From Pristiophorus japonicus (Eukaryota): a stretch of DNA of 64,000 nucleotides. The stretch lies in assembly GCF_044704955.1 (NCBI RefSeq), contig NC_091996.1:97898001-97962000 (forward strand), in the 5' to 3' direction. Below are positions 401-25,580 of this stretch, in pieces. How positions within the stretch are numbered: position 1 is the first letter of the stretch; each line of letters begins with the position of its first letter. The translations under genes and the position numbers were made by a program. The notes below the pieces were generated by a model, which saw only the letters and a list, made by a program, of their open reading frames with translations, searched no databases and was not told the origin of the DNA.

Positions 401-838
401 GACCTACATTGGCTTCCGGTTAAGCAACACCTCGATTTCAAAACCCTCATCCTCGTTTACAAATCCCTCCGTGGCCCTCACCCCTCCCTATCTCTGTAAT
501 CTCCTCCAGCCCCACAACCCCCCGAGATATCTGCACTCCTCTAATTCTGCCCTCCTGACCATCCCTGATTATAATCGCTCCACCATCGGTGGCCGTGCCT
601 TCTGTTGCCTGGGCCCCAAGCTCTGGAACTCCCTCCCTAAACCTCTCCACCTCTCTCTCCTCCTTCAAGACGCTCCTTAAAACCGACCTCTGTGACCCAG
701 CTTTTGTTCACCTGCCCTAATGTCTCCTTATGTGGTTCGGTGTCACGTTTATTTGTTTTGTCTTAAAACAACTCCTGTGAATCGCCTTGGGACGTTTCAC
801 TACATTAAAGGCGCTATATAAATGCGTTGTTGTTGTAC
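400..838 (+). mobile_element. L2-clade LINE 3' fragment
   Basis: Degenerate end of ORF2 (HWLPV/RIDFK/GGRAF...PKLWNSLP-like) and a tail ...aaaggcgctatataaatgcgttgttgttgt. Confidence 0.75.
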
Positions 839-897
839 ATTCGATGCTGTTCTGTCAAGGGACGGAACGTTGGAACTTGAATCGAGGAGAATCTTAC

Positions 898-1101
898 CTC
901 TTCGTTTCAAGGCGAAATAAATAGCGACCGACATCATCGTCATCACCAGCCCCACAAAAACCACAGCCACAATAATGTTGGTGCTCCCGCCTTCTCCTGC
1001 GGACTCCGAGAAATTAGTCGTTCCTCCGTCTCCGAGTGTCACGTTCCCCCAGGGGTTCTGAGTAGGTCTGGAGGAATTCCAAGTCACTGACACCTCGCTC
1101 C
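898..1101 (-). CDS. Stalk + transmembrane exon of a type I membrane glycoprotein (partial gene)
   Basis: Acceptor ttgcaatttcAG and donor G|GTAAGA, phase 1/1, 204 nt. Encodes GSEVSVTWNSSRPTQNPWGNVTLGDGGTTNFSESAGEGGSTNIIVAVVFVGLVMTMMSVAIYFALKRR: three N-glycosylation sequons, a hydrophobic helix and a KRR stop-transfer. Confidence 0.7.
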
Positions 1102-1589
1102 CTGAAATTGCAAGTCACATCGTTGCCGCGGAGCTTATTTTCGCGCCCCGCCCTCCTCTCCGTTCCGCTGCCCCTCCAGACGCAGACTCGCGGAGGGCAT
1201 TGGCCGTGTGTGTGAGTGTCTCGGTGGGGCGAGCTGGCAGAGAGTTAGAGCTTGGGTTTGGGGTGGGACGGTGGGGGTTGCAAGACACTGAAGACACGCT
1301 CTGTGATCTGTCCATCCCGACATGGACAGTGCACCATGGCAGGGTATTTCTCCAGCCCTCATTCAATCCTACCCCACGTTATCAGCCCCAACCCTGGCCT
1401 CGAGCTGTTCCCGGGAGAGAAAGACAGACAGAGAGAACGAGAGAGAGAAAGAGAGAGAGAAAGAGAAAGCGAGAGAGACAGAACAGTGCACATGGTCAGC
1501 TGTATCTCAGCGTGTAGGACTCTCTACCCACTGAGCCACAGCTGATATGTCTGACCATGTGCACAATGCAGTCTTTGTCTTTCTTTTTG

Positions 1590-5941: not shown

Positions 5942-5987
5942 ATGGAGACCCTGATTCTGTGCCTCTTCCTCGTCTGCTCGGGAGCGG
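5942..5987 (+). CDS. Chemokine gene exon 1: signal peptide
   Basis: gctATGG start, encodes METLILCLFLVCSGA, donor G|GTGAGT (phase 1). Confidence 0.85.
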
Positions 5988-8900
5988 GTGAGTTTGTAAA
6001 ATCTCCGGTTCCCGCAGCTTCCGGGGAGATGGGTGGGGAGAGGATGCACCCCAGGGGGGCGACGGGGTGAGGCTTTGGGGGGGTCCATGCAGACCCCTGG
6101 AGATGTGACCGGCGACCAGGGAGGACAGCGAGGCGGCGGCGGGGGGGGGGGGGGGGGGGAGAGACAGAGCACAGTAAAAGGGTGGGACAGTCGGGGTCTG
6201 AGAGGGGCCAAGGTTCCTGGGCAAGACCCCCGCCGCCCGCACAGCCCGCAAAACACTGAGAGCTTCCGCCAGTTGAGTGCGACCGACACAACGCCCCGCG
6301 ACACAAATTAACGTTGAGTTCAGGAAAGTTAAGAGTTTTATACAAAATTCACCAAGATTGAAGGTGCTCCGAAGCATCGTCTCGTACCGGCCAGGAGTGG
6401 GCCCCCTGGCAATTCGACTGCGGCCGGCATCACACCCCCAACCCAAGCCGGGCGGCACAAGGCTTGGGTTTGGGGTGTGATGCCTGCCGCAGTCCAATTG
6501 CCCGCCCAGTCACTTGACGGGGCTGCTTGGCTCCAGAGCAGCTCTCCCCGGGTACAGCGCCAGCTCCTTGGACTGGGGAGAGGAGGGAAGCTGGGCATAT
6601 CCTTCCTTGTTGACAGGGGGCATGGGGGGGTGGGGTACCTTGAAGACACTGCCACCTTTCAGTGATTGATCCGAATGTGAAGTTGCTTGACTCCTCACAC
6701 GATTTGCTCGTTCCATTACTTCGGCGCTAACAGGAAAGAAAGCTTTGGGTTGTCGGCCGAGGTTTTGCAAATCTCAAAAGCTGAGCGAATCAGTAAACTA
6801 TCCCAGGATCAGCTGCTGCTTGGAAAGTGCTTTTCCTTGCACCGCAGGGCACACAGATCGAAGCCAGACTGACACATGTCTCTGTGTTTTATCCACAGTG
6901 TGCGGTGGGAGGCTCTCGGACAGTGCTGGCCGGTCATGCTGTGAACCCAAGTTACCGCAACCATTAAATATATCAGAATTCAACAAGCTGCAGAATTATG
7001 TGACCTTATCCGGTCAGGGAAGATGTCCCGAGTATCTAGTGTAAGTATTGGGCTTTGTACCTAAATAACGCTCATCACAGTAAAGTACAGGTACTTCAGC
7101 CCTGGTTCAGTGGGGAGTCGGGCGGTTGGAGGTTCAAGTCCCACGCCGCAGATTTCAGCACAAAAATCCAGGCTGACACCCCAGTGCAGTGCTGAGATAG
7201 CGCCGCACTGTCGGAGGGGCGGTACTGAGGGAGCGCCGCACTGTCGGAGGGGCGGTACTGAGGGAGCGCCGCACTGTCGGAGGGGCAGTGCTGAGGGAGC
7301 GCCGCACTGTCGGAGGGGCAGTGCTGAGGGAGCGCCGCACTGTCGGAGGGGCAGTGCTGAGGGAGCGCCGCACTGTCGGAGGGGCAGTGCTGAGGGAGCG
7401 CCGCACTGTCGGAGGGGCAGTGCTGAGAGAGCACCGTACTGTCGGAGGGGCAGTACTGAGGGAGCGCCGCACTGTCGGAGGAGCATACTGAGGGAGTGCC
7501 GCACTGTCAGAGGGGCAGAGCTGAGGGAGCGCCGCACTGTCGGAGGAGCAGTACTGAGGGAGCGCCGCACTGTCGGAGGGGCAGTGCTGAGGGAGCGCCG
7601 CACTGTCGGAGGGGCAGTACTGAGGGAGCGCCGCACTGTCGGAGGGGCAGTGCTGAGGGAGCGCCGCACTGTCTGAGGGGCAGTGCTGAGGGAGCGCCGC
7701 ACTGTCGGAGGGGCAGTACTGAGGGAGCGCTGCATGTTGGAGGAGCAGTACTGAGGGAGCGCTGCACTGTTGGAGGGGCAGTACTGAGAGAGCCCCGCAC
7801 TGTCGGAGGGGCAGTAGTGAGGTATTCAATACCTCAATCAGATCACCCCTTCAATACAATACAATATTGACGAGTGCCCTTTCAGAATTGAGCTTGACGT
7901 ATTTATTTCTGATTTACTGTCACAGATTTACCACAAACGCGAATCAGAGATTCTGTATATTATCGGGAAAGGCACAAGCCATGAAAGAGTTTGTTGATGC
8001 GAGATCCACAGGTAAGAATGGCATTGGTCCCAGTGCCAGGTTCCATCTGATTTGGAGCCTGGGTCACAAAATATTCCACAAATCACGCCGTGGGAGAATT
8101 AAAAAAACAATCAAATGTTTTTTTCTTAATCACTTTTTTGAAATATCGGGGATGGGAAAACCAATCTGTGTGATTGACGGACAAGAGTCCAATCGCTTTC
8201 CAATTGGCCGTGGGAAAGTTGGGGTGGGTGCACCGTGATGATTGACATGTTGGACGACCAATGGAGGGCGGGAGGGGCGAGTGGTCCTGGAATACGGTCC
8301 GACCAGAATTGGCGGTTCCCCCCAGACACCCACTCTCTGCAAGTCGGCCTCGAACGTGCGGCCATGCGTGAACAGGAAAGTGCCAGGCTGCGTGACCTGG
8401 GATAGGCCTCAGAGGCAGGGATTCTGCCATTGGCCTCGGGGGCCGGAGGGAGGGGAGGGGAGGGCTGGGGCTGGAGGTGCACGTTCGAGGGCCGGCTATC
8501 ACTCGCTGTATAGGGCGACGGTGGTCACTGGGACTGCAGGAAGATGTCAATCAACTGGTCAGGTGGGCAGAACATTGGCCACTGGAATTCAATCTGGAGA
8601 AGTGTGAGGTAATGCATTTGGGGAGGGCTAACAAGACGAGGGAATACACATTAAATGGTAGGACACTGAGAAGTGTAGAGGAACAAAGGGACCTTGGAGT
8701 GCAGGTCCACAGATCCCTGAAGGTAGCAGACCAGGTGGTTAAGAAGACACACGGGATAGTTACCTTTATTGGCCGAGGCATAGAATACAAGAGCAGGGAG
8801 GTTATGCTTGAACTGTATAAAACACTGGTTAGGCCACAGCTGGAGTACTGCGTGCAGTTCTGGTCACCACATTACAGGAAGGGTGTGATTGCACTGAGAG

Positions 8901-11900
8901 GGTGCAGAAGAGGTTTACCAAAATGTTGCTGGGACTGTAAAATCTAAGCTATGAGGACAGATTGTATAGGCTGGGTTTGTTTTTCTTGGAACAGAGGGGG
9001 CTGAGGGGACTCCTGATTGAGGTGTATAAAATTATGAGGGGCGTGGATAGAGTGGATAGAGGGGGTTGACTTATGAGGAAAGGTTGAGCAGGTTGGGCCT
9101 CTACTCATTGGAATTCAGAAGAATGAGAGGTGATCTTATCAAAACGTGTAAGATTATGAGGGGGCTCCACAAGGTGGATGCAGAGAGGATGTTTCCACTG
9201 ATGTGGGAGACTAGAACTGGAGGGCATGGTCTTAGAATAAGGGGCCGCCCATTTAAAACAGATGAGGAGGAATTTCTTCTCTCAGAGGGTTGTAAATCTG
9301 TGGAATTCGCTGCCTCAGAGAGCTGTGGAAGCTGGGACATTGAATAAATTTAAGACAGAGATAGACAGTTTCTTAACCGATAAGGGGATAAGGGGTTATG
9401 GGGAGGGGGCGGGGAAGTGGAGCTGAGTCCATGATCGAATCAGCCATGATCTTATTAAATGGCGGAGCAGGCTCGAGGGGCTGAATGGCCGACTCCTGCT
9501 CCTAATTCTTATGTTCTTCCCTTAAGAAGCTCCTTTAAAAACTACACTCTTTGACCAAGCTTTTGGTCACCTGCCGTAATCTCTTTGTTTTTTTGCGGAG
9601 AACACTTTTTATATAAACCACTCGACAAACGCAGAGTAATTTGGCTGTAATCCCACATTTCAGAATTGTATAAGTATTGGAATTCCTTTATTAACCAATT
9701 TGTGAATGCAATGAGCAGTTTCCTTCTGTTGCTGCAGAATACAAGCCGTCGACTCTATCTGAATCCAAACGGTTTTTAACACAGTATCTAACGAAATATT
9801 GGTTGATATTGTGACTGCAGGGTTGCATTTGGAACAGTTTTTTTTTCAAACATGTGTGTCCCATTGAAAGGTTCAGCACATAACCACAAGTATTTAGCAG
9901 GCTTGTGTGCCGTTGTGGAAAAGCCACTTTGCCAGTAAAACGGGAGATTTCATCAGAGTTCAATTCTAAAAACTTACGTTACTAACAATTACAAACACCA
10001 GAACCGTGCTGTCTATTTGTTACCTGGCTCAGTCTCAAATTCATTTTATTTGTCTTGTAACCCGCCTGTAAAGCACCCTGGGACATTTTACTAAGCTAAA
10101 GGCTCTATATAAATGTAAGTTGTTCTATTCAAGGCTGAGCGGGACAGAGTTTCACATACTAAGGGAACCGGAGTGTTTGAGTTTGTAGAGTCACTGTATG
10201 CTCCGGGGTTGAAAGGACTCGATTGGGTCCGTCAATGCTCACTCAAGAGACAATGTGAAAATTGTGACGTCCTGTTTTGCTGCCTCAGATCCTGGTGACG
10301 TGGGCGCCCGAACTGGTGGGATAGAGCAGACGGAGACCGGGGAAGGAACTCCTCATCCTGCACCTCCCACTGCAGGTCCAACCATTCCAATATCCAGCTC
10401 CTCCATCACGGCCGTCCCTGGGCTACACGGGCAAGAGAGAACCTTTACCCTTCAGCCAACACCGAACCCCCCCACCCGAGCCCACTGGCTTCAACATGTG
10501 GCTGTCACAACAAGAAACACAGCTGGAGAAACATCCGGGACAAGTCTCCATCCCAGGAATATTGTCACCACGACACTGACATCTCCTCCAAACAAACACG
10601 AGGCGGGAGAAGACAGGACTATGGAGGGCACTTACAGTCCCGGTAAGCATCATCATTCCCCTGTGTGTACTATAGAGAATAAAAGTCCCTATTATAGGGA
10701 ATAACAGCCCCTGTGTATATTGTACGGATTATAGAATCCAGGGACGAGCACATAGATCGTGGCTGACTCTCCAGTGAAGTACTGAGGGAGTGCCGCACTG
10801 TCGGAGGGGCGGTACTGAGGGAGTGTCGGAGGGGCGGTACTGAGGGAGTGCCGCACTGTCGGAGGGGCAGTACTGAGGGAGTGCCGCACTGTCGGAGGGG
10901 CGGTACTGAGGGAGTGCCGCACTGTCGGAGGGGCGGTACTGGGGGAGCGCCGCACTGTCGGAGGGGCAGTACTGAGGGAGAGGGGCGGTACTGAGGGAGC
11001 GCCGCACTTTTGGAGGGGCAGTACTGAGGGAGTGCCGCACTGTCGGAGGGGCAGTACTGGGGGAGCGCCGCACTGTCGGAGGGGCAGTACTGAGGTAGTG
11101 CTGCACTGTCGAAGGGGCAGGACTGAGGGAGCCCCGCACTGTCGGAGGGGCAGTACTGAGGGAGCGCCGCACTTTTGGAGGGGCAGTACTGAGGGAGTGC
11201 CGCACTGTCGAAGGAGCAGGACTGAGGGAGCCCCGCACTGTCGGAGGGGCAGGACTGAGGGAGCCCCGCACTGTCGGAGGGGCAGGACTGAGGGAGCCCC
11301 GCACTGTCGGAGGGGCAGTACTGAGGGGAGCTGTGTCCATGATCGGATCAGCCATGATCGTGATAAATGGCGGAGCAGGCTCGAGGGACCGTATGGCCTC
11401 CTCCTGTTCCTATTGGTTATGTTCTTATGACCTATTTCCCTCAGCAGAGGGGTCAACAACCAGGGGGCATAAATTTAAAGTAATTAGGGGGAGGTTTAGT
11501 GGAAATTTGAGGGAAAATTTCTTCACCCAGAGGGTGGTGGGGGTCTGGAACTCACGGCCTGAAAGGGTGGTAGAGGCAGAAACCCTCACCACATTTAAAA
11601 AGTACTTGGATGTGCACTTGAAGTGCCGTAACCCACAGGGCTACGGACCCAGAGCTGGAAAATGGGATTAGGCTGGGTAGCCCTTGGTCGGCTGGCCCGG
11701 ACACGATGGGCCGAATGGCCTCCTTGTGTCCTGTAAATTTCTCTGATTCTATGAGGGAGAGGCTCAGGGGATCTCTCTGCTGCCTGTGGGAATCTTAATC
11801 TGGGATAAGGGGATTGTCCTGTGAGGAGAGATTGAGTAGACAAGGCCCAGATTTTCTAGAGTTTAGAAGAATGAGAGGTGATCTCATTGAAACATAGAAA

Positions 11901-14900
11901 ATTCTTACAGGGATTGACAGGGTAGATGCAGGCTGGGGAGTCGAGAACCGGGGGTCACAGTCTCAGGATAAGGGGTCGTCCATTTAGGACGGAGATGAGG
12001 AGGAATTTCTTCACTCAGAGGGTGGTGAATCTTTGGAATTCTCTGCCCCAGAGGGCTGTGGAGACTCAGTCGTTGAGTATATTCAAGGCTGAGATCGATA
12101 GAGTTTTGGATATTACGGGAATCGAGGGATATGGGGATCGAGGGGGAAAGTGGAGTTGAGACGAAGATCAGCCATGATCGTATTGAATGGCGGAGCAGGC
12201 TCGAGGGGCCGAATGGCCGACTCCTGCTCCTAATTCTTATGTTCCTCCCTTAAGAAGCTCCTTTTAAAAACTGACCTCTTTGACCAAGCTTTTGGTCACC
12301 TGCCGTAATCTCTTACCTGGCTCGGTCTCAAATTAATTTTATTTGTCTTGTAACCCGCCTGTGAAGCACCCTGGGACATTTTACTCAGCTAAAGGAGCTA
12401 TATAAATGTAAGTTCTATTCAAGGCTGAGAGGGACAGATTTTCACATACTAAGGGAACCGGAGTGTTTGAGTTTGTAGAGTCACTGTATGCTCCGGGGTT
12501 GAAAGGACTCGATTGGGTCCGTCAATGCTCACTCAAGAGACAATGTGAAAATTGTGACGTCCTGTTTTGCTGCCTCAGATCCTGGTGACGTGTGCGCCCG
12601 AACTGGTGGGCTAGAGCAGACGGAGACCGGGGAAGGAACTCCTCATCCTGCACCTCCCACTGCAGGTCCAACCATTCCAATATCCAGCTCCTCCATCACG
12701 GCCGTCCCTGGGCTACACGGGCAAGAGAGAACTTTCACCCTTCAGCCAACACCGAACCCCCCCACCCGAGCCCACTGGCTTCAACGTGTGGCTGTCACAA
12801 CAAGAAACACAGCTGGAGAAACATCCGGGACAAGTCTCCATCCCAGGAATATTGTCGACATGACACTGACATCTCCTCCAAACAAACACGAGGCGGGAGA
12901 AGACAGGACTATGGAGGGCACTTACAGTCCCGGTAAGCATCATCATTCCCCTGTGTGTACTATAGAGAATAAAAGTCCCTATTATAGGGAATAACAGCTC
13001 CTGAGTATATTGTACGCATTATAGAATCCAGGGACGAGCACATAGATCGTGGCTGACACTCCAGTGAAGTACTGAGGGAGTGCCGCACTTTCGGAGGGGC
13101 GGTACTGAGGGAGTGTCGGAGGGGCGGTACTGAGGGAGTGCCGCACTGTCGGAGGGGCAGTACTGAGGGAGTGCCGCACTGTCGGAGGGGCAGTACTGAG
13201 GGAGTGCCGCACTGTCGGAGGGGCGGTACTGAGGGAGCCCCGCACTGTCGGAGGGGGCAGTACTGAGGGAGTGCCGCACTGTCGGAGGGGCAGTACTGAG
13301 GGAGCGCTGTACTATTGGAGGGGCAGTACTGAGGGAGCGCCGCACTGTCGGAGAGCCAGTACTGAGGGAGCGCCGCACTGTCGGAGGGACGGTACTGAGG
13401 GAACGCCGCACTGTCGGAGGGGCAGTACTGAGGGAGCGCTGCACTGTCGGAGGTGCAGTACAGAGGGAGTGCCGCACTGTCGGTTGGAACATTAAACAGA
13501 GGCCCTGTCTGCTCTCTCAGATGGACACAAAAGATCCCAGGGCCACTATTTCAAAGAAGAGCAGGGGAATTCTCCTCTGTGTCCTGGGGCCAATATTTAT
13601 CCCTCGACCAACATCGCAAAAACAGATTATCTGGGTCATTATCACATTGCTGTGTGTGGGAGCTTGCTGTGCGCAAATTGGCTGCCGCGTTTCCCACATT
13701 ACAACAGTGACTACACTTTTGGAGCATTTTGAGATGTGCGGTGGTTGTGAACGGTGCTATATAAATGTACAGGAGGAGGCCATTGGGCCCATCGAGCCTG
13801 TGCCGGCTCTGTGAGCGAGCGATCCCATCAGTCCCATCCCCCCGCTCTCTCCCCACAGCCCGGTGAATGTTTCCCCGTCAAGTATTGATCCAATTCCCGG
13901 TTTGAAAGTTACTATTGAATCTGCTCCCACCGCCCTTTCAGGCAGCGCGTTCCCGATCACAACAACTCGCTGCGTAAAAACATTCTCCCCATCTCCCCCT
14001 CTGGTTCCATCGTCGATTATCGTCAATCTGTGTCCCCCTGGTTACCGACCCTCCTGCCCCCGGGAACAGTCTCTCCCGATCGATTCTATCGCGTTATGGT
14101 ATGCGTGAAGCACTGTGTTAGAATCCCACTTGCAAAGCAAGTTCCCGGCAGGATGCTGGCTGTTGACGTGAAGATTTCGGACTGACGGTCGTGTTGCTGA
14201 CTTGGGTCGATAATCCGTGCTGTTTTTACAGGCTCCACAACGTCAGGACGCGGAGGGGCGAGAATGGGCCACGGAGTCGGGCCTGGGGTTGGAGGTTTGC
14301 TGCATTGCAAGGATTGCGACGAGCAACACAGATACTCGGCCGGTGAGGTCACAGCAGGTCAATGGTTGGCACTGGGCCTGTTGGCGTCTGCCATCGCGCT
14401 GCTCCTCACTGCTGCCATCCTCTTCGCCAGCATCAAGTTTAAGTGCACACAACAGATGCCAGGTGAGCTAACCGAGAGATGGAGGCAGACTGTCCTGCCC
14501 TCCGCCTCGCTGTGAATGGAGGGCAGTGCACGAGTTGGTGAGGCCAACCTTCTGGTAGTGAGGGGGGGGTGAATTAACGACGTTCAGCGGACCCCGGGAC
14601 ACTGGGGATGGTCAGGGCTGACTTGGGAGCAGGGGTGGTCTCCGATCGATTGGGAATTGAGATTTGGGCTTGTCACAAACCACCTCCTAGTGGACCTGGC
14701 TCCACAGTACAGGAGGGGCGAGGGGTCCACAGACATGCTGGGCCCACTGCCCTCCCTCGGTGCTGTATCCTGCTCTCGCTCAGCTTGACTGGCCTCCTGC
14801 ACATTTGCCCTGCTCCCCAGGCTCCACCATCAGCGGCTGTGTCTTCAGCTACCAGGGCCCTCAGCTCTGGGACCCTTTCCCTAAGTCTCTCCGCCTCTCT

Positions 14901-17388
14901 CTCTGACCAAGCCTCTGGTGGCTCGGTGCCAGTTCTTGTCTGACCACGCTCCCGTGAAGTGCCTTAGGACCTAGGTACACAGGAACAGGAGGAGGCCCAT
15001 TCAGCCCCTCGAGCCTGTTACACAGGAACAGGAGGAGGCCCATTCAGCCCCGCGAGCCTGTTACATAGGAGCAGGCCATTCAGCCCCTCGAGCCTGCTCC
15101 GCCACTCAATGAGATCGCGGCTGATCTGTGACCTAACTCCATCCACCCGCTGTAATGTATTTGCTCCGTGGGTTCTTTGCTTTAGAATCTACAGCAACAC
15201 ATTGCTATTAAGAACTAGTTGGTTTATTAGCAAAGGTTTAACAATCACGCGACACATTAACGGTTCATCCACCAGGCTCACAACCACCTGCCCCATCGTG
15301 GATCCCCCGAACCCAACTGGCTGGGGTTTTATTGAGTCTTGTGAACATCATGTGACTGGCTAAGCCCCTCCCAATGCAACAGTGCCACCAGCCTGTGACC
15401 ATACTCTCGGGGCGTACACTACACCCACCTTTGACCCGTATCCCTTAATAAATTTGATTAACAAAAATATATCGATCTCTGATTTAAAATTAACAATTGA
15501 CCCAGCATCAATTGCCGTTTGCAGGAGAGTTCCAAACCTCTCCCACCCTGTGTGTGTCGGAGTGTTCCCTAATTACACTCCTGAAGGGTTTGGCTCCAAT
15601 CTTTAGACTGTGCCCCTAGTCCCAGACTCCCCAACCAGCGGGAATTGTCTCCCAACCACCCTCTCTGCTCCCCGTAATATCCTGAAACCTTCGATCAGAG
15701 CCCCCCTTAACCTTCTATAGTCTGGGGAATACAGCCCTAGTTTGTGTAATCTCTTCTTGTAACTTAACCCTTGGGGTCCAGGTAGCATTCTGCTGACTTT
15801 TACTGCATGAAGGGTGGTTATATAAATGTAGGTTGTTGGTGCAGTATTGAAAGTCTGACTGATTTTGTGGGCTGAGGGCGGGGGAGGGGAAACGACTCTG
15901 GGACGTTTGGTTTATTTGAGGCCTTATCTACCATTGCTGAAGGCCTCATCCATGCCCCTGTTACCTCTCGGCTTGACTATTCCAACACACTCCTGGCCGG
16001 CCTCCCACATTCTACCCGACGTACTGGAGGTGATCCAAAACTCGGCTGCCCCGTGTCCTAACTCGCATCGAGTCCCACTCACCCATCACCCCCTGTGCTC
16101 GCTGACCCGTGTCCTAACTCGCACCCAGTCCCACTCATCCATCACCCCCTGTGCTCACTGCCCCGTGTCCCAAATCGCACCCAGTCCCGCTCACCCATCA
16201 CCCTCTGCTCGCTGACCCGTGTCCTAACTTGCACCCAGTCCCGCTCACCCATCTCCCCCGTATCCTAACTCACACCGATCCCGCTCACCCATCACCCCCT
16301 GTGCTCACTGCCCCGTGTCCTAACTCGAACCGACTCCCGCTCACCCATCACCCCCTGTGCTCACTGCCCCGTGTCCTAACTCGCACCCAGTCCCGCTCAC
16401 CCATCACCCTCTGTGCTCACTGCACGTGTCCCAACTCGCACCGAGTCCCACTCACCCATCACCCCCTGTGCTCGCTGACCCGTGTCCTAACTCGCACCGA
16501 GTCCCACTCATCCATCACCCCCTGTGCTCACTGCCCCGTGTCCCAACTCGCACCCAGTCCCGCTCACCCATCACTCCCTGTGCTCACTGCCCCGTGTCCT
16601 AACTCGAACCGACTCCCGCTCACCCATCACCCCCTGTGCTCGAATGGCCGACTCCTGCACCTATTTTCCATGTTTCTATGTTTCTCTGCTCCAAGGAGAA
16701 CAACCCCAGCTTCTCCAGTCTCTCCACATAACGGAAGTCCCTCGTCCCTAGAACCATTCTGGTCAATCTCCTCTCTCCCCTCCCCCAAGCCTTCACATCC
16801 TTCCTAAAGTGCGGTGCCTAGAATTGAACCCAATGCTCCAGCTGAGGGATGACCTTGTTCTATAAAGGTTTACCAGAACTTCCTTGGGTTCTGTACTCTA
16901 TTCCCCAATTTATAACCGCTTGCAATTTCAAAATAGCTGCCGGGGTCAGAGAGACAGGCAAGCTTGGGAAGGTGAAAGGTCAGAGAGGGTAAAATGGCGG
17001 CAACAATCGGTAAGGCAGGATCTAAATTTAAAGTTTTAAAAAAATATCGAGAAAGCCAGAGAAAGAATAGGAGGGAAAACAAAGAGCCGGAGAGAGTAAG
17101 CACGGGTTAAAGTGTTTACAGTTTTATATCAATTTGTCTTTTGGCGGACGTTTGAGTCAGTCATTTACCGTTAACCTTGTGACACGAGCACCGATTTTAT
17201 TGCTTTGTGTTTAGTGTTTGTCACAGCCTGAGAGCCAGAAACAGCCAGATGTTTCTCAAGGGCCTGCCAGTAGTGTTGAGGGTTAAACCGCTGACTTTTA
17301 ACCCCCACCCTTTGTGTTTTATACAGATGTTATGGTGCGAGGTGTGCGATACAGCAGGATTTGCGGCCTTCGCACTGACACAGTGTGA
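5942..17388 (+). CDS. Transmembrane mucin-stalk chemokine with CC motif (CXCL16/CX3CL1-like architecture), 7 coding exons, 424 aa
   Basis: Exons 5942-5987, 6899-7040, 7926-8011, 10289-10642, 12579-12932, 14232-14462, 17327-17388. All introns are GT-AG and the phases 1,2,1,1,1,1 join into one 1275-nt ORF. Confidence 0.85.
6899..7040 (+). CDS. Chemokine gene exon 2: CC motif and third Cys
   Basis: Acceptor gtgttttatccacAG. Encodes VCGGRLSDSAGRSCCEPKLPQPLNISEFNKLQNYVTLSGQGRCPEYLV. Donor GT|GTAAGT is phase 2, the canonical chemokine intron position. Confidence 0.88.
7100..7815 (+). mobile_element. Deu-SINE (3' truncated) with 33-bp array, in chemokine intron 2
   Basis: tRNA-like head (ggttcaagtccc) followed by the 33-bp unit array. 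Confidence 0.75.
7926..8011 (+). CDS. Chemokine gene exon 3: FTT...FC strand and C-terminal helix
   Basis: Acceptor tttactgtcacAG, encodes FTTNANQRFCILSGKAQAMKEFVDARST, donor G|GTAAGA. Confidence 0.85.
8535..9518 (+). mobile_element. CR1 LINE 3' fragments (two joined pieces)
   Basis: Translations FNLEKCEVMHLG, YKTLVRPQLEYCVQFWSP and YEERLSRLGLYSLE, with a CR1 tail gactcctgctcctaattcttatgttc. Confidence 0.9.
9585..10020 (+). mobile_element. AT-rich insertion, possibly a decayed Penelope-like GIY-YIG fragment
   Basis: Absent from the paralogous duplicate (~12313) and interrupts an L2-type tail. From ~9890 it translates as VFSRLVCRCGK / (frameshift) FASKTGDFIRVQF. Confidence 0.35.
10289..10642 (+). 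CDS. Chemokine gene exon 4a: mucin-like stalk
   Basis: Acceptor ttttgctgcctcAG, 354 nt, Thr/Pro/Ser/Gly-rich (DPGDVGART...EGTYSP), donor G|GTAAGC, symmetric phase 1. Confidence 0.8.
10735..11325 (+). mobile_element. Deu-SINE fragment with 33-bp array
   Basis: 33-bp unit array after the SINE head remnant. Paralogous to 13025-13768. Confidence 0.75.
11330..12245 (+). mobile_element. Several CR1 LINE 3' fragments
   Basis: TRGHKFKV...FFTQRVVGVWNS and GHSLRIRGRPFRTEMRRNFFTQRVVNLWNSLP, each with a CR1 tail. Confidence 0.85.
12579..12932 (+). CDS. Chemokine gene exon 4b: duplicated mucin-like stalk
   Basis: Near-identical copy of exon 4a, 2290 bp downstream, with intact splice sites and open frame. 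Confidence 0.78.
13025..13768 (+). mobile_element. Deu-SINE with 33-bp array and L2-type tail
   Basis: Array, Deu core and tail gtgctatataaatg. Confidence 0.8.
14232..14462 (+). CDS. Chemokine gene exon 5: juxtamembrane + TM
   Basis: Acceptor tgtttttacAG. Encodes GSTTSGRGGARMGHGVGPGVGGLLHCKDCDEQHRYSAGEVTAGQWLALGLLASAIALLLTAAILFASIKFKCTQQMP. Donor G|GTGAGC. Confidence 0.85.
14975..15790 (-). mobile_element. CR1 LINE 3' fragment interrupted by a solo LTR
   Basis: Minus-strand GLSYKKRLHKLGLYS...RRLRG and a reiterated CR1 tail. Confidence 0.7.
15151..15423 (-). mobile_element. Solo LTR
   Basis: TG...CA termini with near-TSD CCCGC/CCCAC. Second copy at ~40407-40647. Confidence 0.7.
15940..16640 (+). 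repeat. L2 fragment with ~57-bp tandem expansion
   Basis: L2 ORF2 remnant (..LEVIQNSAA..) followed by the 57-bp unit array. Confidence 0.8.
17327..17388 (+). CDS. Chemokine gene exon 6: cytoplasmic tail
   Basis: Acceptor ctttgtgttttatacAG, phase 1. Encodes DVMVRGVRYSRICGLRTDTV-stop. Confidence 0.75.
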
Positions 17389-18969: not shown

Positions 18970-19080
18970 ACTGTATTTATGTATTTAACAAAAAGACGTT
19001 TATTTTTATGAATTTATTTAATGTATTTCTAAAAAATCATATTTAAATAAAATTCTATCTCAACGCGTCCGTTGTGTGTA
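18970..19080 (+). promoter_or_regulatory. AU-rich elements and polyadenylation signal of the chemokine gene
   Basis: Five ATTTA pentamers (including overlapping ATTTATTTA), AATAAA at 19046-19051 and downstream GT-rich gttgtgtgta. Confidence 0.65.
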
Positions 19081-19184
19081 TATTAAACCTGCGATAAAGG
19101 TGTGTGTTCAACAGCCCAAACCTATATCGCCCTCCGCTCTGAACATATGTTCCTTTCTCAACCGGTCCCAACATTAACGAGAGT

Positions 19185-21496
19185 GCGGGGAGGGGGAGAG
19201 TGTCAGAGAGGGGAGTGGGAGAGGGGAAGGGTAGGGGAAGGGAGGGGAGGGGTGGGAGAGGTGAGGGGTAGGGTAGGGGAGGGGACGGGTGGGAGTGGGA
19301 GAGGAGAGGGAGGGGAGGAGTGGGAGAGGAGAGGAGAGGAGGGGTGGGAGAGGAGAGGGGTGGGAGTGGAGAGGAGTGGGAGAGGAGAGGGGTGGGAGTG
19401 GGAGAGGAGAGGGGTGGGAGAGGAGAGGAGATGAGTGGGAGAGGAGAGGGGTGGGAGTGGGAAGGAGAGGAGTGGGAAGGAGAGGAGTGGGAAGGAGAGG
19501 GAGAGGAGAGGAGGGGTGGGAGTGGGAGAGGAGAGGGGTGGGAGTGGGAGAGGAGTGAGAGTGGAGAGGGGTGGGAGTGGGAGAGGAGAGGGAGAGGAGA
19601 GGATAGGAGTGGGAGTGGGAGAGGGGTGGGAGTGGGAGAGGGGTGGGAGTGGGAGAGGAGAGGGGTGGGAGTGGGAGAGGAGAGGGAGAGGAGAGGATAG
19701 GAGTGGGAGTGGGAGAGGGGTGGGAGTGGGAGAGGAAAGGGGTGGGAGGGGAGAGGGGTGGGGGTGGGAGTGGGAGAGGAGTGGGAGAGGAGAGGAGAGG
19801 GGTGGGAGGGAGTGGGAGAAGAGAGAGGGGAGGGGTGGGAGTGAGGAGGAGTGGGAGTGAGTGAGGGTGGGAGTGAGAGGGGAGGGGGAGTGAGGGTGGG
19901 GGAGGGGGAGTGAGGGTGGGGGAGGGGGAGTGAGGGTGGGGGAGGGGGAGTGAGGGTGGGAGTGAGAGGGGAGGGAGAGTGAGGCTGGGGGAGGGGGAGT
20001 GAGGGTGGGGGTGGGAGTGAGAGGGGAGGGGGAGTGAGGGTGGGAGTGAGAGGGGAGAGGGGGAGTGAGAGGGGAGAGGGGGAGGGGGAGGGGGAGTGAG
20101 GGGGGAGGGGGAGTGAGGGGGGAGGGGGAGTGAGGGTGGGAGTGAGGGGGAGGGTGGGAGTGAGGGTGGGAGTGAGAGGGGAGGGGGAGTGAGGGTGGGA
20201 GTGAGAGGGGAGGGGGAGTGAGGGTGGGAGTGAGAGGGGAGGGGGGGTGAGGGTGGGAGTGAGAGGGGAGGGGGAGTGAGGGTGGGAGTGAGAGGGGAGG
20301 GGGAGTGAGGGTGGGAGTGAGAGGGGAGGGGGGGAGTGAGAGGGGAGGGGGAGTGAGGGTGGGAGTGAGAGGGGAGGGGGAGTGAGGGTGGGAGTGAGAG
20401 GGGAGGGGGAGTGAGTGAGAGGGGAGGGGGAGTGAGGGTGGGAGTGAGAGGGGAGGGGGAGTGAGGGTGGGAGTGAGAGGGGAGGGGGAGTGGAGGGTGG
20501 GAGTGAGAGGGGAGGGGGAGTGAGGGTGGGGGAGGGGGAGTGAGGGTGGGGGTGGGAGTGAGAGGGGAGGGGGAGTGAGGGTGGGGGGGGGGTGGGGAGT
20601 GAGAGTGAGGGTGGGAGTGAGAGGGGAGGGGGAGTGAGGGTGGGAGTGAGAGGGGAGGGGGAGTGAGGGTGGGAGTGAGAGGGGAGGGAGAGTGAGGTGG
20701 GGGAGGGGGAGTGAGGGTGGGGGTGGGAGTGAGGGTGGGGGTGGGAGTGAGAGGGGAGTGGGAGTGAGGGTGGGGGTGAGAGGGGAGGGGGAGTGAGGGT
20801 GGGAGTGAGAGGGGGAGGGGGAGTGAGGGTGGGAGTGAGAGGGGAGGGGGAGTGAGGGTGGGAGTGAGAGGGGGGGTGGGAGTGAGAGGGGAGGGGGAGT
20901 GAGGGTGGGAGTGAGAGGGGAGGGGGAGTGAGGGTGGGAGTGAGAGGGGAGGGGGAGTGAGGGTGGGAGTGAGAGGGGAGGGGCAGTGAGGGTGGGAGTG
21001 AGGGTGGGAGTGAGAGGGGAGGGGGAGTGAGGGTGGGAGTGGGAGGGGAGGGGGAGTAAGGGTGGGAGAGGGAGTGAGGGTGGGAGTGAGGAGGAGAGGG
21101 GGAGTGAGGGTGGGAGTGAGGAGGGGAGGGGGAGTGAGGGTGGGAGTGAGGAGGGGAGGGGGAGTGAGGGTGGGAGTGAGAGGGGAGGGGGAGTGAGGGA
21201 GGGTGGGAGTGAGAGAGAGAGGGGAGGGGGAGTGAGGGGAGGGGGAAGAAGGGAGTAGGGGAGAGGGCAGTAGGGAGAGGGCGAGGGGGGGAAGAAGGGA
21301 GTAGGGGAGAGGGCGAGGGGGGGGGAAAGAAGGGAGCAGGGGAGAGGGCGAGAGAGGGGGGTGGAAGAAGGGAGTAGGGGAAGGGGGGGAAGAAGGGAGT
21401 AGGGGAGAGGGGGGGAGAAGAAGGGAGTAGGGGAGAGGGCGAGAGAGGGGGTGGAAGGGGGAGAAGAAGGGAGTAGGGGAGAGGGCGAGAGAGGGG
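19185..21496 (+). repeat. Polypurine (G/A-rich) low-complexity tract ending at an assembly gap
   Basis: Units such as gagggtgggagtgagaggggagggggagt with almost no C. N-gap at 21497-21696. Confidence 0.95.
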
Positions 21497-21696
21497 NNNN
21501 NNNNNNNNNNNNNNNNNNNNNNNNNNNNNNNNNNNNNNNNNNNNNNNNNNNNNNNNNNNNNNNNNNNNNNNNNNNNNNNNNNNNNNNNNNNNNNNNNNNN
21601 NNNNNNNNNNNNNNNNNNNNNNNNNNNNNNNNNNNNNNNNNNNNNNNNNNNNNNNNNNNNNNNNNNNNNNNNNNNNNNNNNNNNNNNNNNNNNNNN

Positions 21697-24600
21697 GAGG
21701 GACTGAGAGACACCAGTCAGTGTACAGATATCTCCCTGAGGGAGAGGGGACTGAGAGACACCAGTCAGTGTACAGATATCTCCCTGAGGGAGAGGGGACT
21801 GAGAGACACCAGTCAGTGTACAGATATCTCCCTGAGGGAGAGGGGACTGAGAGACACCAGTCAGTGTACAGATATCTCCCTGAGGGAGAGGGACTGAGAG
21901 ACACCAGTCAGTGTACAGATATCTCCCTGAGGGAGAGGGGACTGAGAGACACCAGTCAGTGTACAGATATCTCCCTGAGGGAGAGGGGACTGAGAGACAC
22001 CAGTCAGTGTACAGATATCTCCCTGAGGGAGAGGGGACTGAGAGACACCAGTCAGTGTACAGATATCTCCCTGAGGGAGAGGGACTGAGAGACACCAGTC
22101 AGTGTACAGATATCTCCCTGAGGGAGAGGGGACTGAGAGACACCAGTCAGTGTACAGATATCTCCCTGAGGGAGAGGGGACTGAGAGACACCAGTCAGTG
22201 TACAGATATCTCCCTGAGGGAGAGGGGACTGAGAGACACCAGTCAGTGTACAGATATCTCCCTGAGGGAGAGGGACTGAGAGACACCAGTCAGTGTACAG
22301 ATATCTCCCTGAGGGAGAGGGGACTGAGAGACACCAGTCAGTGTACAGATATCTCCCTGAGGGAGAGGGGACTGAGAGACACCAGTCAGTGTACAGATAT
22401 CTCCCTGAGGGAGAGGGGACTGAGAGACACCAGTCAGTGTACAGATATCTCCCTGAGGGAGAGGGACTGAGAGACACCAGTCAGTGTACAGATATCTCCC
22501 TGAGGGAGAGGGGACTGAGAGACACCAGTCAGTGTACATATATCTCCCTGAGGGAGAGGGGACTGAGAGACACCAGTCAGTGTACAGATATCTCCCTGAG
22601 GGAGAGGGGACTGAGAGACACCAGTCAGTATACAGATATCTCCCTGAGGGAGAGGAACTGAGAGACACCAGTCAGTGTACAGATATCTCCCTGAGGGAGA
22701 GGGACTGAGAGACCCCAGTCAGTGTACAGATATCTCCCTGAGAGACACCAGTCACTGTACACATATCTCCCTGAGGGAGAGGGACTGAGAGACACCTGTT
22801 AGTGTACAGATATCTCCCTGAGAGACACCAGTCACTGTACACATATCTCCCTGAGGGACTGAGAGACACCAGTCAGTGTACAGATATCCCTGAGGGAGAG
22901 GGGACTGAGAGACACCAGTCAGTGTACAGATATCTCCCTGAGGGAGAGGGACTGAGAGACACCAATCAGTGTACAGATATCTCCCTGAGGGAGAGGGACT
23001 GAGAGACACCAGTCAGTGTACAGATATCTCCCTGAGGGAGAGGGGACTGAGAGACACCAGTCAGTGTACAGATATCTCCCTGAGGGAGAGGGACTGAGAG
23101 ACACCAGTCAGTGTACAGATATCTCCCTGAGGGAGAGTGACTGAGAGACACAAGTCAGTGTACAGATATCTCCCTGAGGGAGAGGGGACTGAGAGACACC
23201 AGTCAGTGTACAGATATCTCCCTGAGGGAGAGGGACTGAGAGACCCCAGTCAGTATACAGATATCTCCCTGAGGGAGAGGGGACTGAGAGACACCAGTCA
23301 GTGTACAGATATCTCCCTGAGGGAGAAGGGACTGAGAGACCCCAGTCAGTATACAGATATCTCCCTGAGGGAGAGGGGACTGAGAGACACCAGTCAGTGT
23401 ACAGATATCTCCCTGAGGGAGAAGGGACTGAGAGACCCCAGTCAGTATACAGATATCTCCCTGAGAGAGAGGGACTGAGAGACACCAGTCAGTGTACAGA
23501 TATCTCCCTGAGGGAGAGGGGACTGAGAGACCCCAGTCAGTGTACAGATGTCTCCCTGAGGGAGAGGGACTGAGAGACACCAGTCAGTGTACAGATATCT
23601 CCCTGAGGGAGAGGGGACTGAGAGACACCAGTCACTGTACAGATATCTCCCTGAGGGAGAGTGACTGAGAGACACCAGTCAGTGTACAGATATCTCCCTG
23701 AGGGAGAGGGGACTGAGAGACACCTGTTAGTGTACAGATATCTCCCTGAGGGAGAGGGACTGAGAGACACCAGTCAGTGTACAGATATCTCCCTGAGGGA
23801 GAGGGGACTGAGAGACACCTGTTAGTGTACAGATATCTCCCTGAGGGAGAGGGACTGAGAGACACCAGTCAGTGTACAGATATCTCCCTGAGGGAGAGGG
23901 GACTGAGAGACACCAGTCAGTGTACAGATATCTCCCTGAGGGAGAGGGACTGAGAGACACCAGTCAGTGTACAGATATCTCCCTGAGGGAGAAGGGACTG
24001 AGAGACACCAGTCAGTGTACAGATATCTCCCTGAGGGAGAAGGGACTGAGAGACCCCAGTCAGTGTACAGATATCTCCCTGAGGGAGAGGGACTGAGAGA
24101 CACCTGTTAGTGTACAGATATCTCCCTGAGGGAGAGGGACTGAGAGACACCAGTTAGTTTACAGATATCTCCCTGAGGGAGAGGGACTGAGAGACACCAG
24201 TCAGTGTACAGATATCTCCGACTGAGAGACACCAGTCAGTGTAGAGATATCTCCCTGAGGGAGAGGGGACTGAGAGACACCAGTCAGTGTACAGATATCT
24301 CCCTGAGGGAGAGGGACTGAGAGACACCAGTCAGTGTACAGATACCTCCCTGAGGGAGAAGGGACTGAGAGACACCAGTCACTGTACTGATATCTCCCTG
24401 AGGGAGAGGGACTGAGAGACACCAGTCACTGTACTGATATCTCCCTGAGGGAGAGGGACTGAGAGACACCAGTCACTGTACTGATATCTCCCTGAGGGAG
24501 AGGGGACTGAGAGACACCAGTCAGTGTACAGATATCTCCCTGAGGGAGAGGTGACTGAGAGACACCAGTCAGTGTACAGATATCTCCCTGAGGGAGAGGG

Positions 24601-25330
24601 GACTGAGAGACACCAGTCAGTGTACAGATATCTCCCTGAGGGAGAGGGGACTGAGAGACACCAGTCAGTGTACAGATATCTCCCTGAGGGAGAGGGGACT
24701 GAGAGACACCAGTCAGTGTACAGATATCTCCCTGAGGGAGAGGGGACTGAGAGACACCAGTCAGTGTACAGATATCTCCCTGAGGGAGAGGGGACTGAGA
24801 GACACCAGTCAGTGTACAGATATCTCCCTGAGGGAGAGGGGACTGAGAGACACCAGTCAGTGTAGAGATATCTCCCTGAGGGAGAGGGGACTGAGAGACA
24901 CCAGTCAGTGTAGAGATATCTCCCTGAGGGAGAGGGGACTGAGCGACACCAGTCAGTGTACAGATATCTCTCTGAGGGAGAGGGGACTGAGAGACACCAG
25001 TCAGTGTACAGATATCTCCCTGAGGGAGAGGGGACTGAGAGACACCAGTCAGTGTACAGATATCTCCCTGAGGGAGAGGGACTGAGAGACACCAGTCAGT
25101 GTACAGATATCTCCCTGAGGGAGAGGGGACTGAGAGACACCAGTCAGTGTAGAGATATCTCCCTGAGGGAGAGGGGACTGAGAGACACCAGTCAGTGTAC
25201 AGATATCTCCCTGAGGGAGAGGGACTGAGAGACACCTGTTAGTGTACAGATATCTCCCTGAGGGAGAAGGGACTGAGAGACCCCTGTTAGTGTACAGATA
25301 TCTCCCTGAGGGAGAGGGACTGAGAGACCC
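21697..25330. repeat. 47/48-bp satellite
   Basis: Unit gagggg-actgagagacaccagtcagtgtacagatatctccctgaggga, with 191-bp higher-order periodicity in the first kb. Confidence 0.95.
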
Positions 25331-25380
25331 CAGACCCTGTTGGGGAGCCACCGGGTGGGTTGTGGTGATGTCACAGACAG

Positions 25381-25580
25381 TCAGAAGCGCCTGTTCCCTG
25401 GTACGGCTCCGTCCATTGGAACGTTTATACCGGCCAGCGAGCCAATCTGACTGTACCCGCCTCCTGGGATATTCCTTAGTGGCCTAGAGGTGCTGTAGTA
25501 ACTGGTGTAAGTGGCCTGGGATATCACCAGTCTGGGCACAGGGTGGGAATGCTCTCGACCTCTGTCTCCACCTCGCAGAG
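25381..25580 (-). CDS. IgSF receptor terminal cytoplasmic exon
   Basis: Acceptor cacttccccataacAG, phase 1. Encodes ALRGGDRGREHSHPVPRLVISQATYTSYYSTSRPLRNIPGGGYSQIGSLAGINVPMDGAVPGNRRF-stop in non-repeat sequence. Confidence 0.55.

What the first reader, a model, noticed from the sequence alone, without database searches (positions are those of the whole stretch)
5942..17388. Hidden 7-exon gene for a membrane-tethered CC chemokine on a mucin stalk
Seen: seven exons with canonical splice sites and matching phases assemble into signal peptide - CC-x27-C-x14-C domain - T/P/S-rich stalk - TM - short tail (424 aa). The phase-1 and phase-2 introns sit at the standard chemokine positions. Established: in mammals only CX3CL1 and CXCL16 have this stalked transmembrane architecture, and neither has adjacent cysteines. 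Inference: this is a cartilaginous-fish stalked chemokine with a CC motif. The long C2-C3 spacing and RC-x-x-Y-x-x-F segment recall CXCL16 (compared from memory), so it may be a CXCL16 orthologue or ancestral form, or an independent invention. It lacks the usual Trp after Cys4.
Basis: partly seen in the sequence, partly recalled or inferred. Interest (0 to 1): 0.92.

Follow-up and report, generated by a model that had tools for sequence, protein, structure and literature searches.

The report
Sawshark stalked membrane chemokine-like gene
This is a real, spliced seven-exon gene of the Japanese sawshark for a membrane protein that holds a small chemokine-like four-cysteine domain on a sugar-coated stalk; public annotation already models it but calls it "mucin-2-like", and no search or fold prediction here could confirm that the domain is a true chemokine.

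Summary
A public protein of Pristiophorus japonicus (P0007, "mucin-2-like isoform X1") matches every exon translation 100%, so the gene is already modelled, just not called a chemokine. Spliced RNA contigs join exon 3 to the stalk exon at 8011/10289.

The gene belongs to a family of at least seven 97-99% identical full-length variants. Recorded isoforms lack the membrane exon (347 aa) or one stalk exon (306 aa).

The chemokine reading is plausible but unproven:
- For: CC-x27-C-x14-C spacing, intron phases 1 then 2, and by-eye likeness to Xenopus CXCL16, which also has CC (CC-x26-C-x14-C, C-P-x-Y-x-V).
- Against: Pfam, PDB sequence search, HMMER over 1.84 billion proteins and two atlas searches found no relative outside this species, and AlphaFold2 failed (pLDDT 32).

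A CC motif in CXCL16 and stalked membrane chemokines in zebrafish are both published, so the design is less unprecedented than claimed.

The scan noted the stalk-exon duplication on this same stretch (s1-877311). It also noted a CC-chemokine array on another piece of this genome (s1-876549, unchecked).

The parts
5942..5987 (+). Exon 1: ATG (G at -3 and +4) and 15 codons of a hydrophobic signal peptide; donor CGG|gtgagt, phase 1
   Evidence: 15/15 identical to P0007
6899..7040 (+). Exon 2 (142 nt): end of the signal peptide, the CC pair, a 27-residue N-loop with one N-I-S sequon, and Cys3 followed by P-E-Y-L; donor AGT|gtaagt, phase 2, five residues after Cys3
   Evidence: 46/46 identical to P0007; tblastn 100%
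7926..8011 (+). Exon 3 (86 nt): rest of the four-cysteine domain (Cys4 and a presumed C-terminal helix without Trp); phase 1 donor
   Evidence: 28/28 identical to P0007; RNA contigs start exactly at 7926 and splice from 8011 to 10289
10289..10642 (+). Exon 4 (354 nt, phase 1-1): first copy of the T/P/S-rich stalk, 117 full codons
   Evidence: 117/117 identical to P0007 residues 93-209; covered by RNA contigs in X1-X3
12579..12932 (+). Exon 5 (354 nt, phase 1-1): second copy of the stalk exon, 8 nt different from exon 4 (6 nonsynonymous nt in 5 codons, 2 synonymous)
   Evidence: 117/117 identical to P0007 residues 211-327
10020..13478 (+). Tandem duplication that carries the stalk exon: 10020-11173 matches 12313-13478 at 94.6%, 2290-nt offset. 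Each copy holds the exon, its flanks and a 33-nt SINE-tail array
14232..14462 (+). Exon 6 (231 nt, phase 1-1): Gly-rich juxtamembrane piece with C-K-D-C, the transmembrane helix, and K-F-K stop-transfer. It is skipped in frame in the 347-aa isoform P0009
   Evidence: AF2 helix 251-283 of P0020 is the only part with pLDDT above 50
17327..17388 (+). Exon 7: 20-residue cytoplasmic tail with Y-S-R-I, ending T-D-T-V, then stop

Best explanation
The locus is one copy of a recently amplified gene family of the Japanese sawshark (Pristiophorus japonicus). It encodes a type I membrane glycoprotein made of a signal peptide, a ~75-residue four-cysteine domain, two copies of a 118-residue O-glycan-type stalk, one TM helix and a ~27-residue tail.

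Shown: the gene model, its splicing from exon 3 to exon 4 in RNA, the multi-copy family, and recorded isoforms that lack the TM exon or one stalk exon.

Inferred:
- The N-terminal domain is a very divergent CC-type chemokine domain with disulfides C29-C58 and C30-C73.
- The protein works like CXCL16 or CX3CL1. The stalk holds the domain away from the membrane, where it acts as an adhesion ligand for a chemokine receptor on leukocytes. A CXCR6-like receptor is the obvious candidate, since CXCR6 exists in cartilaginous fish.
- A soluble chemoattractant form arises by in-frame skipping of exon 6, or by shedding.

Because exons 4, 5 and 6 are all phase 1-1, each can be dropped without breaking the frame. 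This gives variable stalk length and a membrane/secreted switch.
For: - Exons, phases and splice sites.
- P0007 is identical to all seven exon translations. P0009 (347 aa, same locus) lacks exactly exon 6. The 306-aa forms lack one stalk exon.
- RNA contigs splice 8011 to 10289 in X1 and X2, and the introns are uncovered.
- The pattern CC-x27-C-x14-C and a net basic domain, 9 K/R against 7 D/E.
- Intron phase 1 after the signal exon and phase 2 after the next is the chemokine gene rule (PMC3346806).
- Xenopus CXCL16 printed in the supplement of PMC8811506, read by eye: CC-x26-C-x14-C, Pro at CC+5, basic-Leu at CC+15/16, and C-P-x-Y-x-V after Cys3, all shared with the shark protein.
- CXCL16 in Xenopus has CC instead of CXC.
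- CXCR6 is present in elephant shark while no ligand is listed there.
- Human CXCL16 also yields a soluble form by ADAM10 cleavage or alternative splicing.
Against: - No statistical support for chemokine homology: Pfam gave no IL8 or other hit at E<=10 on the exons or on the full proteins.
- phmmer against PDB found no chemokine.
- phmmer of exon 2 against 1.84 billion representatives found only the family itself plus bacterial repeat proteins.
- Three word-indexed searches of 5.8 billion proteins found only the family, and two atlas searches came back blank.
- AF2 on an alignment of 13 near-identical paralogues gave pLDDT 32 and no confident fold for the domain.
- The conserved Trp after Cys4 is missing.
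- The RNA contig carries 10446 T>C and 10496 A>G, the signature of a paralogue of the P0002 type. So expression of this particular copy is not singled out.
- No receptor or function data exist.
Confidence: 0.6

Rival explanations
1. It is the cartilaginous-fish orthologue (here multi-copy) of CXCL16. This is a narrower version of the best explanation: the CXCL16-CXCR6 pair would date to the jawed-vertebrate ancestor, and CC would be the older form of the motif.
For: - Same order of parts as CXCL16, with separate stalk and TM exons.
- The C2-C3 spacing of 27 and C3-C4 spacing of 14 are almost those of Xenopus CXCL16 (26 and 14), together with shared Pro at CC+5 and C-P-x-Y-x-V (by eye).
- Xenopus CXCL16 is also CC.
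- CXCR6 exists in elephant shark.
- CXCL16 is known to diverge very fast and to lose synteny outside mammals.
Against: - No sequence search links it to CXCL16.
- The third cysteine pair that follows the helix in Xenopus, which makes the six cysteines of the mammalian chemokine domain, is absent.
- The tail has Y-S-R-I, not Y-x-P-V.
- The window holds no ZMYND15 or MED11; the neighbours are V-set Ig exons.
- I could not run an alignment or a tree with CXCL16, because no CXCL16 sequence was available by reference.
Confidence: 0.4
2. It is a lineage-specific stalked CC chemokine. An ordinary three-exon CC chemokine gene gained stalk and TM exons by exon shuffling in the sawshark lineage, independently of CXCL16 and CX3CL1.
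For: - No relative is detectable in any other species among 5.8 billion and 1.84 billion proteins.
- The family is very young, at 97-99% identity.
- The stalk exon itself was recently duplicated together with SINE arrays.
- Stalked or TM chemokines have arisen separately in zebrafish.
- C-P-x-x-x-V-F-x-T after Cys3 also recalls ordinary CCLs (from memory).
Against: The long 27-residue N-loop is unusual for ordinary CCLs but matches CXCL16. Absence of detectable relatives is weak evidence for a 46-residue query and a fast-evolving family.
Confidence: 0.25
3. It is not a chemokine at all. It would be a mucin-like type I membrane protein whose small disulfide-bonded N-terminal domain only mimics the CC..C..C pattern.
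For: All homology and fold tests were negative or failed. The annotators' pipelines named the copies mucin-2-like, SPT2 homolog and cadherin-related 5-like. The Trp after Cys4 is missing.
Against: Four independent features coincide with chemokine genes: the signal exon ends in phase 1; a phase 2 intron lies five residues after Cys3; the four-cysteine spacing fits; and a hydrophobic strand-like V-F-T-T after Cys3 is followed by a helix-like segment after Cys4. The annotators' names reflect only the low-complexity stalk.
Confidence: 0.15

Closest known systems
CXCL16 (SR-PSOX), especially the CC-motif form of Xenopus
   Same: - Type I membrane protein with a chemokine domain, mucin stalk, TM helix and short tail.
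- Adjacent cysteines, as in Xenopus.
- Long C2-C3 spacing (27 against 26), C3-C4 spacing of 14, and C-P-x-Y-x-V after Cys3 (by eye).
- A soluble form is possible through alternative splicing.
   Different: - No detectable sequence similarity by any search.
- Four rather than six cysteines in the domain, and no Trp after Cys4.
- Tail motif Y-S-R-I with a T-D-T-V end instead of Y-x-P-V.
- A duplicated stalk exon, and at least seven near-identical copies in one genome.
- Neighbours are Ig V-set genes, not ZMYND15/MED11.
CX3CL1 (fractalkine)
   Same: A chemokine head on a mucin stalk with a TM anchor, existing in both membrane and soluble forms.
   Different: It has a CX3C motif rather than CC, and shorter C2-C3 spacing. 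From memory, its stalk, TM and tail lie in one large last exon, whereas here they are in four separate phase 1-1 exons.
Zebrafish CXCL-chr24a/b/d
   Same: Non-mammalian chemokines with a Ser/Thr-rich mucin region and a C-terminal TM segment (PMC2416438). They show the design recurs outside mammals.
   Different: They are CXC type, much shorter (153-210 aa) and found in teleosts. I made no sequence comparison.
Ordinary CC chemokines (CCL family, Pfam PF00048)
   Same: The CC motif, gene phases 1 then 2, and a hydrophobic V-F-x-T strand after Cys3.
   Different: No match to PF00048 at E<=10, an N-loop about five residues longer, no Trp after Cys4, and about 330 extra residues of stalk, TM and tail.

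Membership tests
Chemokines (IL8-like, Pfam PF00048) | Four cysteines arranged C1C2...C3...C4 in a secreted ~70-residue domain | tested here: met
   CC at residues 29-30, C58 and C73, giving CC-x27-C-x14-C, behind a hydrophobic signal peptide
Chemokines (IL8-like, Pfam PF00048) | Significant match to the family profile | tested here: not met
   hmmscan against Pfam-A at E<=10 gave no IL8 hit, either for the exon translations or for the full proteins P0001 and P0002. PDB phmmer found no chemokine
Chemokines (IL8-like, Pfam PF00048) | IL8-like fold: N-loop, three-stranded sheet, C-terminal helix, disulfides 1-3 and 2-4 | tested here: inconclusive
   AF2 on the 13-sequence, 97-99% identical alignment gave mean pLDDT 32, with the domain below 50 throughout. 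No deeper alignment could be built
Chemokines (IL8-like, Pfam PF00048) | Gene structure with a phase 1 intron after the signal exon and a phase 2 intron after the second exon | tested here: met
   Phases were read from the sequence; the rule is stated in PMC3346806
Chemokines (IL8-like, Pfam PF00048) | Binds a chemokine GPCR and drives migration or adhesion | not testable with these tools
   Needs receptor-binding and cell assays
CXCL16 | Chemokine domain, mucin stalk, TM helix and cytoplasmic tail in one type I protein | tested here: met
   TM helix in AF2; domain order as described in PMC5145142
CXCL16 | Sequence relatedness to known CXCL16 | tested here: inconclusive
   Only a by-eye comparison with the Xenopus sequences printed was possible. 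Spacing 27/14 against 26/14, and Pro at CC+5, basic-Leu at CC+15/16 and C-P-x-Y-x-V are shared, for about 20% identity overall. No alignment tool was run, because no CXCL16 sequence exists here by reference
CXCL16 | Six cysteines in the chemokine domain (an extra pair after the helix) | tested here: not met
   There is no cysteine between C73 and the stalk; the next ones are C215 (stalk copy 2) and the C-K-D-C at 353/356 next to the TM helix. Six cysteines are reported for mammals and seen in Xenopus
CXCL16 | Y-x-P-V motif in the tail | tested here: not met
   The tail reads Y-S-R-I and ends T-D-T-V; the motif is described in PMC5145142
CXCL16 | Synteny with ZMYND15 and MED11 | tested here: inconclusive
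   The 64-kb window shows no such genes. It holds only Ig V-set exons at 33.5 and 36 kb, retroelements and satellites.
CX3CL1 | CX3C spacing of the first two cysteines | tested here: not met
   The two cysteines are adjacent

The most novel reading that the evidence does not exclude
This family is the long-missing cartilaginous-fish CXCL16. The transmembrane CXCL16-CXCR6 adhesion axis would then be as old as jawed vertebrates, with CC as its ancestral motif, rather than being a mammalian or tetrapod novelty. In the sawshark it would have been amplified to seven or more copies, with a spliced switch between membrane and secreted forms and between stalk lengths.
Probability: 0.35. Interest if true: 0.65.

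Novelty: new variant of a known kind. Interest (0 to 1): 0.55.

Why it matters
Published surveys list CXCL16 as mammalian (PMC10792014) or tetrapod (PMC3568907). Yet its receptor CXCR6 is present in elephant shark, which leaves an orphan receptor in cartilaginous fish.

A stalked, membrane-anchored CC chemokine-like protein in a shark is a concrete candidate ligand and makes that question testable. It also shows how annotation pipelines name such genes after their low-complexity stalk ("mucin-2-like", "SPT2 homolog", "cadherin-related 5-like") and miss the signalling head.

The recent amplification and the in-frame, skippable stalk and TM exons give a natural example of tuning stalk length and membrane or soluble form by splicing. 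The value is limited until the chemokine fold and a receptor are shown.

Tried and rejected
**Searches that found nothing useful**
- Pfam on each exon translation and on the full proteins: nothing relevant.
- phmmer of the full protein and of exons 2 and 3 against PDB sequences: no chemokine, only chance hits to an engineered repeat protein and ribosomal L29.
- phmmer of exon 2 against 1.84 billion representatives: only the family, plus bacterial repeat proteins matched through N-V-S-x-F-x-N-D low-complexity repeats, rejected as noise.
- Word-indexed searches with the whole protein, with residues 1-95 and with residues 209-306: only the family.
- ESM atlas, twice: no usable hit.
- AF2 with the paralogue alignment: pLDDT 32. 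I therefore ran no fold search, which would have been meaningless on that model, and did not use the second AF2 job because no more diverse alignment could be built.
- tblastn of P0007 on the window: no second copy of the gene in these 64 kb.
- A check of the script machine for profile libraries: none.

The database protein P0007, identical to every exon translation, stood in for it.
- I did not align against Xenopus CXCL16 with any tool, because that sequence exists here only as printed text without a reference. The comparison is by eye.
- The comparison with human CXCL16 and with CCL2/CCL5 is from memory only and counts as a lead.
- Read laying was given 2,891 letters without the 33-nt arrays, so the junctions 2-3, 4-5, 5-6 and 6-7 were not tested with RNA.
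Full report
**1. What is in the sequence.**

| Exon | Coordinates | Content | Donor phase |
|---|---|---|---|
| 1 | 5942-5987 | ATG plus 15 hydrophobic codons | 1 |
| 2 | 6899-7040 | The CC pair, a 27-residue loop with one N-I-S sequon, then Cys3 | 2, five residues after Cys3 |
| 3 | 7926-8011 | Cys4, 14 residues after Cys3, then a helix-like stretch without Trp | 1 |
| 4 | 10289-10642 | 354-nt stalk exon | 1 |
| 5 | 12579-12932 | 354-nt stalk exon, second copy | 1 |
| 6 | 14232-14462 | Gly-rich piece, C-K-D-C, a ~24-residue hydrophobic helix and K-F-K | 1 |
| 7 | 17327-17388 | 20 tail residues ending T-D-T-V, then TGA | – |

- Every intron is GT..AG behind a pyrimidine tract.
- The exon lengths sum to 1275 nt, which is 424 aa.
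- The stalk (residues 92-328) is 38% S+T+P and has 58 Ser/Thr.
- The head domain carries 9 K/R against 7 D/E.
- Kyte-Doolittle windows above 1.6 occur only at the N-terminus and at about residues 372-400.

**2. The stalk exon duplication is real.**

Region 10020-11173 matches 12313-13478 at 94.6%, with a 2290-nt offset. Each copy carries the exon, its flanks and a 33-nt SINE-tail array.

The two exons differ at 8 of 354 nt. Seven different full-length paralogues all carry both copies, with copy-specific residues such as T-T or D-M distributed differently among loci. So this is no assembly artefact. The duplication predates the spread of the family, and there are signs of exchange between the copies.

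**3. The gene is already modelled, and it is a family.**

phmmer of the exon 2 peptide against 1.84 billion representatives returned two eukaryotic proteins, P0001 (424 aa) and P0002 (306 aa), plus bacterial repeat noise.

Their clusters hold 17 sequences, all from Pristiophorus japonicus. They are named mucin-2-like, protein SPT2 homolog, cadherin-related family member 5-like or uncharacterized.

- **This locus:** P0007 ("mucin-2-like isoform X1", 424 aa) equals all seven window exon translations at 100%.
- **TM-less isoform:** P0009 (isoform X2, 347 aa) is the same protein minus exactly exon 6.
- **Short-stalk forms:** the 306-aa forms, several labelled isoform X4 or X5, lack one stalk exon.
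- **Copy number:** seven distinct 424-aa sequences differ from each other by 2-15 residues. That means at least seven loci or alleles, very recently amplified.
- **In this window:** only one copy is present.

So "hidden" is wrong for the gene itself, but right for its nature: none of the names points to a chemokine.

**4. RNA evidence.**

Three small runs from one study (109-165 million letters, kind not on record) hold 71-77% of the words of exon 4.

Their contigs cover exons 3 and 4 and interspersed repeats, but not the unique intron sequence. They therefore behave as RNA.

- A 1248-nt contig in X1 and a 263-nt contig in X2 run from exactly 7926 to 8008, then continue at 10286. They skip 2277 nt with GT..AG ends; shifting the cut by 3 gives the equivalent junction 8011/10289.
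- The X1 contig has 232 nt before exon 3. Exons 1 and 2 account for 188, leaving about 44 nt of 5' UTR. It has 575 nt after exon 4.
- It differs from the window at 10446 (T>C) and 10496 (A>G, His to Arg), but not at the other sites that separate exon 4 from exon 5. That combination is the stalk of the P0002 type.

The family is therefore expressed and spliced as modelled, but expression of this particular copy is not singled out. I did not test junctions 2-3, 4-5, 5-6 and 6-7 with reads. They rest on the database models and on the sequence.

**5. Is the head a chemokine domain?**

The evidence in favour is circumstantial:
- the CC-x27-C-x14-C pattern behind a signal peptide;
- intron phases 1 then 2, which a published analysis states as the common rule for chemokine genes (PMC3346806);
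- a phase 2 intron five residues after Cys3;
- a hydrophobic V-F-T-T stretch after Cys3, and a helix-like stretch after Cys4;
- the overall design of the known transmembrane chemokines.

Every automated test was negative or failed:
- Pfam gave nothing at E<=10.
- PDB sequence search gave nothing.
- Neither exhaustive HMMER nor three indexed searches found a relative outside the species.
- Two atlas searches were blank.
- AlphaFold2 on the only available alignment, 13 sequences at 97-99% identity, gave pLDDT 32, with only the TM helix above 50.

The AF2 failure says little, because the alignment carries no evolutionary information. The fold is simply untested. I put the chemokine-fold reading at roughly 0.8, and the full "works like CXCL16/CX3CL1" reading at 0.6.

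**6. Comparison with what is known.**

- Adjacent cysteines are already known in CXCL16. The Xenopus orthologue lacks the residue between the first two cysteines (PMC3568907; PMC8811506).
- Mucin-stalked transmembrane chemokines are not confined to mammals. Zebrafish has three of CXC type (PMC2416438).

The Xenopus CXCL16 proteins printed in the supplement of PMC8811506 can be compared by eye.

| Feature | Xenopus CXCL16 | Shark protein |
|---|---|---|
| Cysteine spacing | CC-x26-C-x14-C | CC-x27-C-x14-C |
| Position CC+5 | Pro | Pro |
| Positions CC+15/16 | basic, then Leu | basic, then Leu |
| After Cys3 | C-P-x-Y-x-V | C-P-E-Y-L-V |
| After the helix | an extra cysteine pair | none |

Mammalian CXCL16 has six cysteines in the domain and a Y-x-P-V tail motif (PMC5145142), which the shark tail (Y-S-R-I ... 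T-D-T-V) does not have.

My recollection that human CXCL16 has x27 and R-C-x-Y-Y-x-x-F is from memory only.

CXCR6 is reported in elephant shark, while CXCL16 is listed only for mammals and Xenopus or called mammalian. A shark ligand is therefore expected but undescribed. CXCL16 is also described as highly diverged and with altered synteny in frogs.

Synteny gives no help here. The window holds Ig V-set exons at 33477-33887 and 35990-36478 on the minus strand, retroelement fragments and satellites. An earlier unchecked note places LECT2 4 kb beyond the window's end.

**7. How it most likely works.**

Shown:
- it is a type I membrane protein with a cysteine-knit head on a long Ser/Thr/Pro stalk;
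- exons 4, 5 and 6 are each phase 1-1 and a multiple of three in length;
- recorded isoforms drop exon 6 or one stalk exon in frame.

Inferred:
- The head is displayed about 240 heavily O-glycosylated residues above the membrane and engages a chemokine GPCR on passing leukocytes. CXCR6-like is the first candidate. This would mediate capture or adhesion.
- The exon 6-skipped product, or a shed ectodomain, acts as a soluble attractant. This parallels the ADAM10 cleavage and alternative splicing described for CXCL16.
- The Y-S-R-I and the C-terminal T-D-T-V look like a tyrosine sorting signal and a PDZ-type ending. This is inference from general motif knowledge and was not tested.

**8. Verdict.**

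The thing is best filed as a new variant of a known kind, the stalked transmembrane chemokines. It has no profile-level membership in any family yet, an open question of CXCL16 orthology (about 0.35-0.4), and a notable recent amplification.

Interest is moderate. It offers a testable ligand candidate for the shark CXCR6 and a case of mis-naming by low-complexity sequence, but the fold and the receptor remain to be shown.

Noticed in passing
window 33477-33887 (-) and 35990-36478 (-): Two open exons with clear immunoglobulin V-set matches (Pfam PF07686, E 4e-11 and 1e-14). An earlier unchecked note describes a CC-chemokine array on another piece of this genome that lies between VJ-type receptor genes, which raises the possibility of a duplicated chemokine-plus-receptor block.
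   Followed up: partly
window 803-1114 (-): An open exon encoding an N-glycan-rich stretch, a hydrophobic TM-like segment (about 22 residues) and a basic stop-transfer, with no Pfam hit. It is probably the TM exon of another membrane protein gene upstream of the finding.
   Followed up: partly
window 50734-53730 (-): An LTR-retrotransposon pol remnant: reverse transcriptase, RNase H and integrase core domains in adjacent open frames (Pfam RVT_1, RT_RNaseH, rve). A further RT fragment lies at 37839-38501 (+).
   Followed up: yes
window 19000-25500, 27600-29550, 31600-32600, 40800-42000: Large tandem satellite arrays with strong G over C skew (up to 0.88 at 20-22 kb), next to assembly gaps at 21497-21696, 42368-43137 and 43243-43739. 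The 33-nt SINE-tail arrays (for example 7190-7830, 10780-11330, 13070-13490) recur in the introns of the gene.
   Followed up: no
proteins P0001-P0020 (alignment A1): The residues that mark stalk copy 1 against copy 2 (T-T or D-M at the end of the exon, Gly or Cys at codon 5, His or Arg at codon 69) are swapped or homogenised among paralogues. This suggests gene conversion or unequal crossing-over between the two stalk exons.
   Followed up: partly
window 10614-10708 and 10122-10298: Short RNA contigs in run X2 run unspliced across the exon 4 donor and acceptor. They could be pre-mRNA or retained introns; a paralogue origin is not excluded.
   Followed up: no
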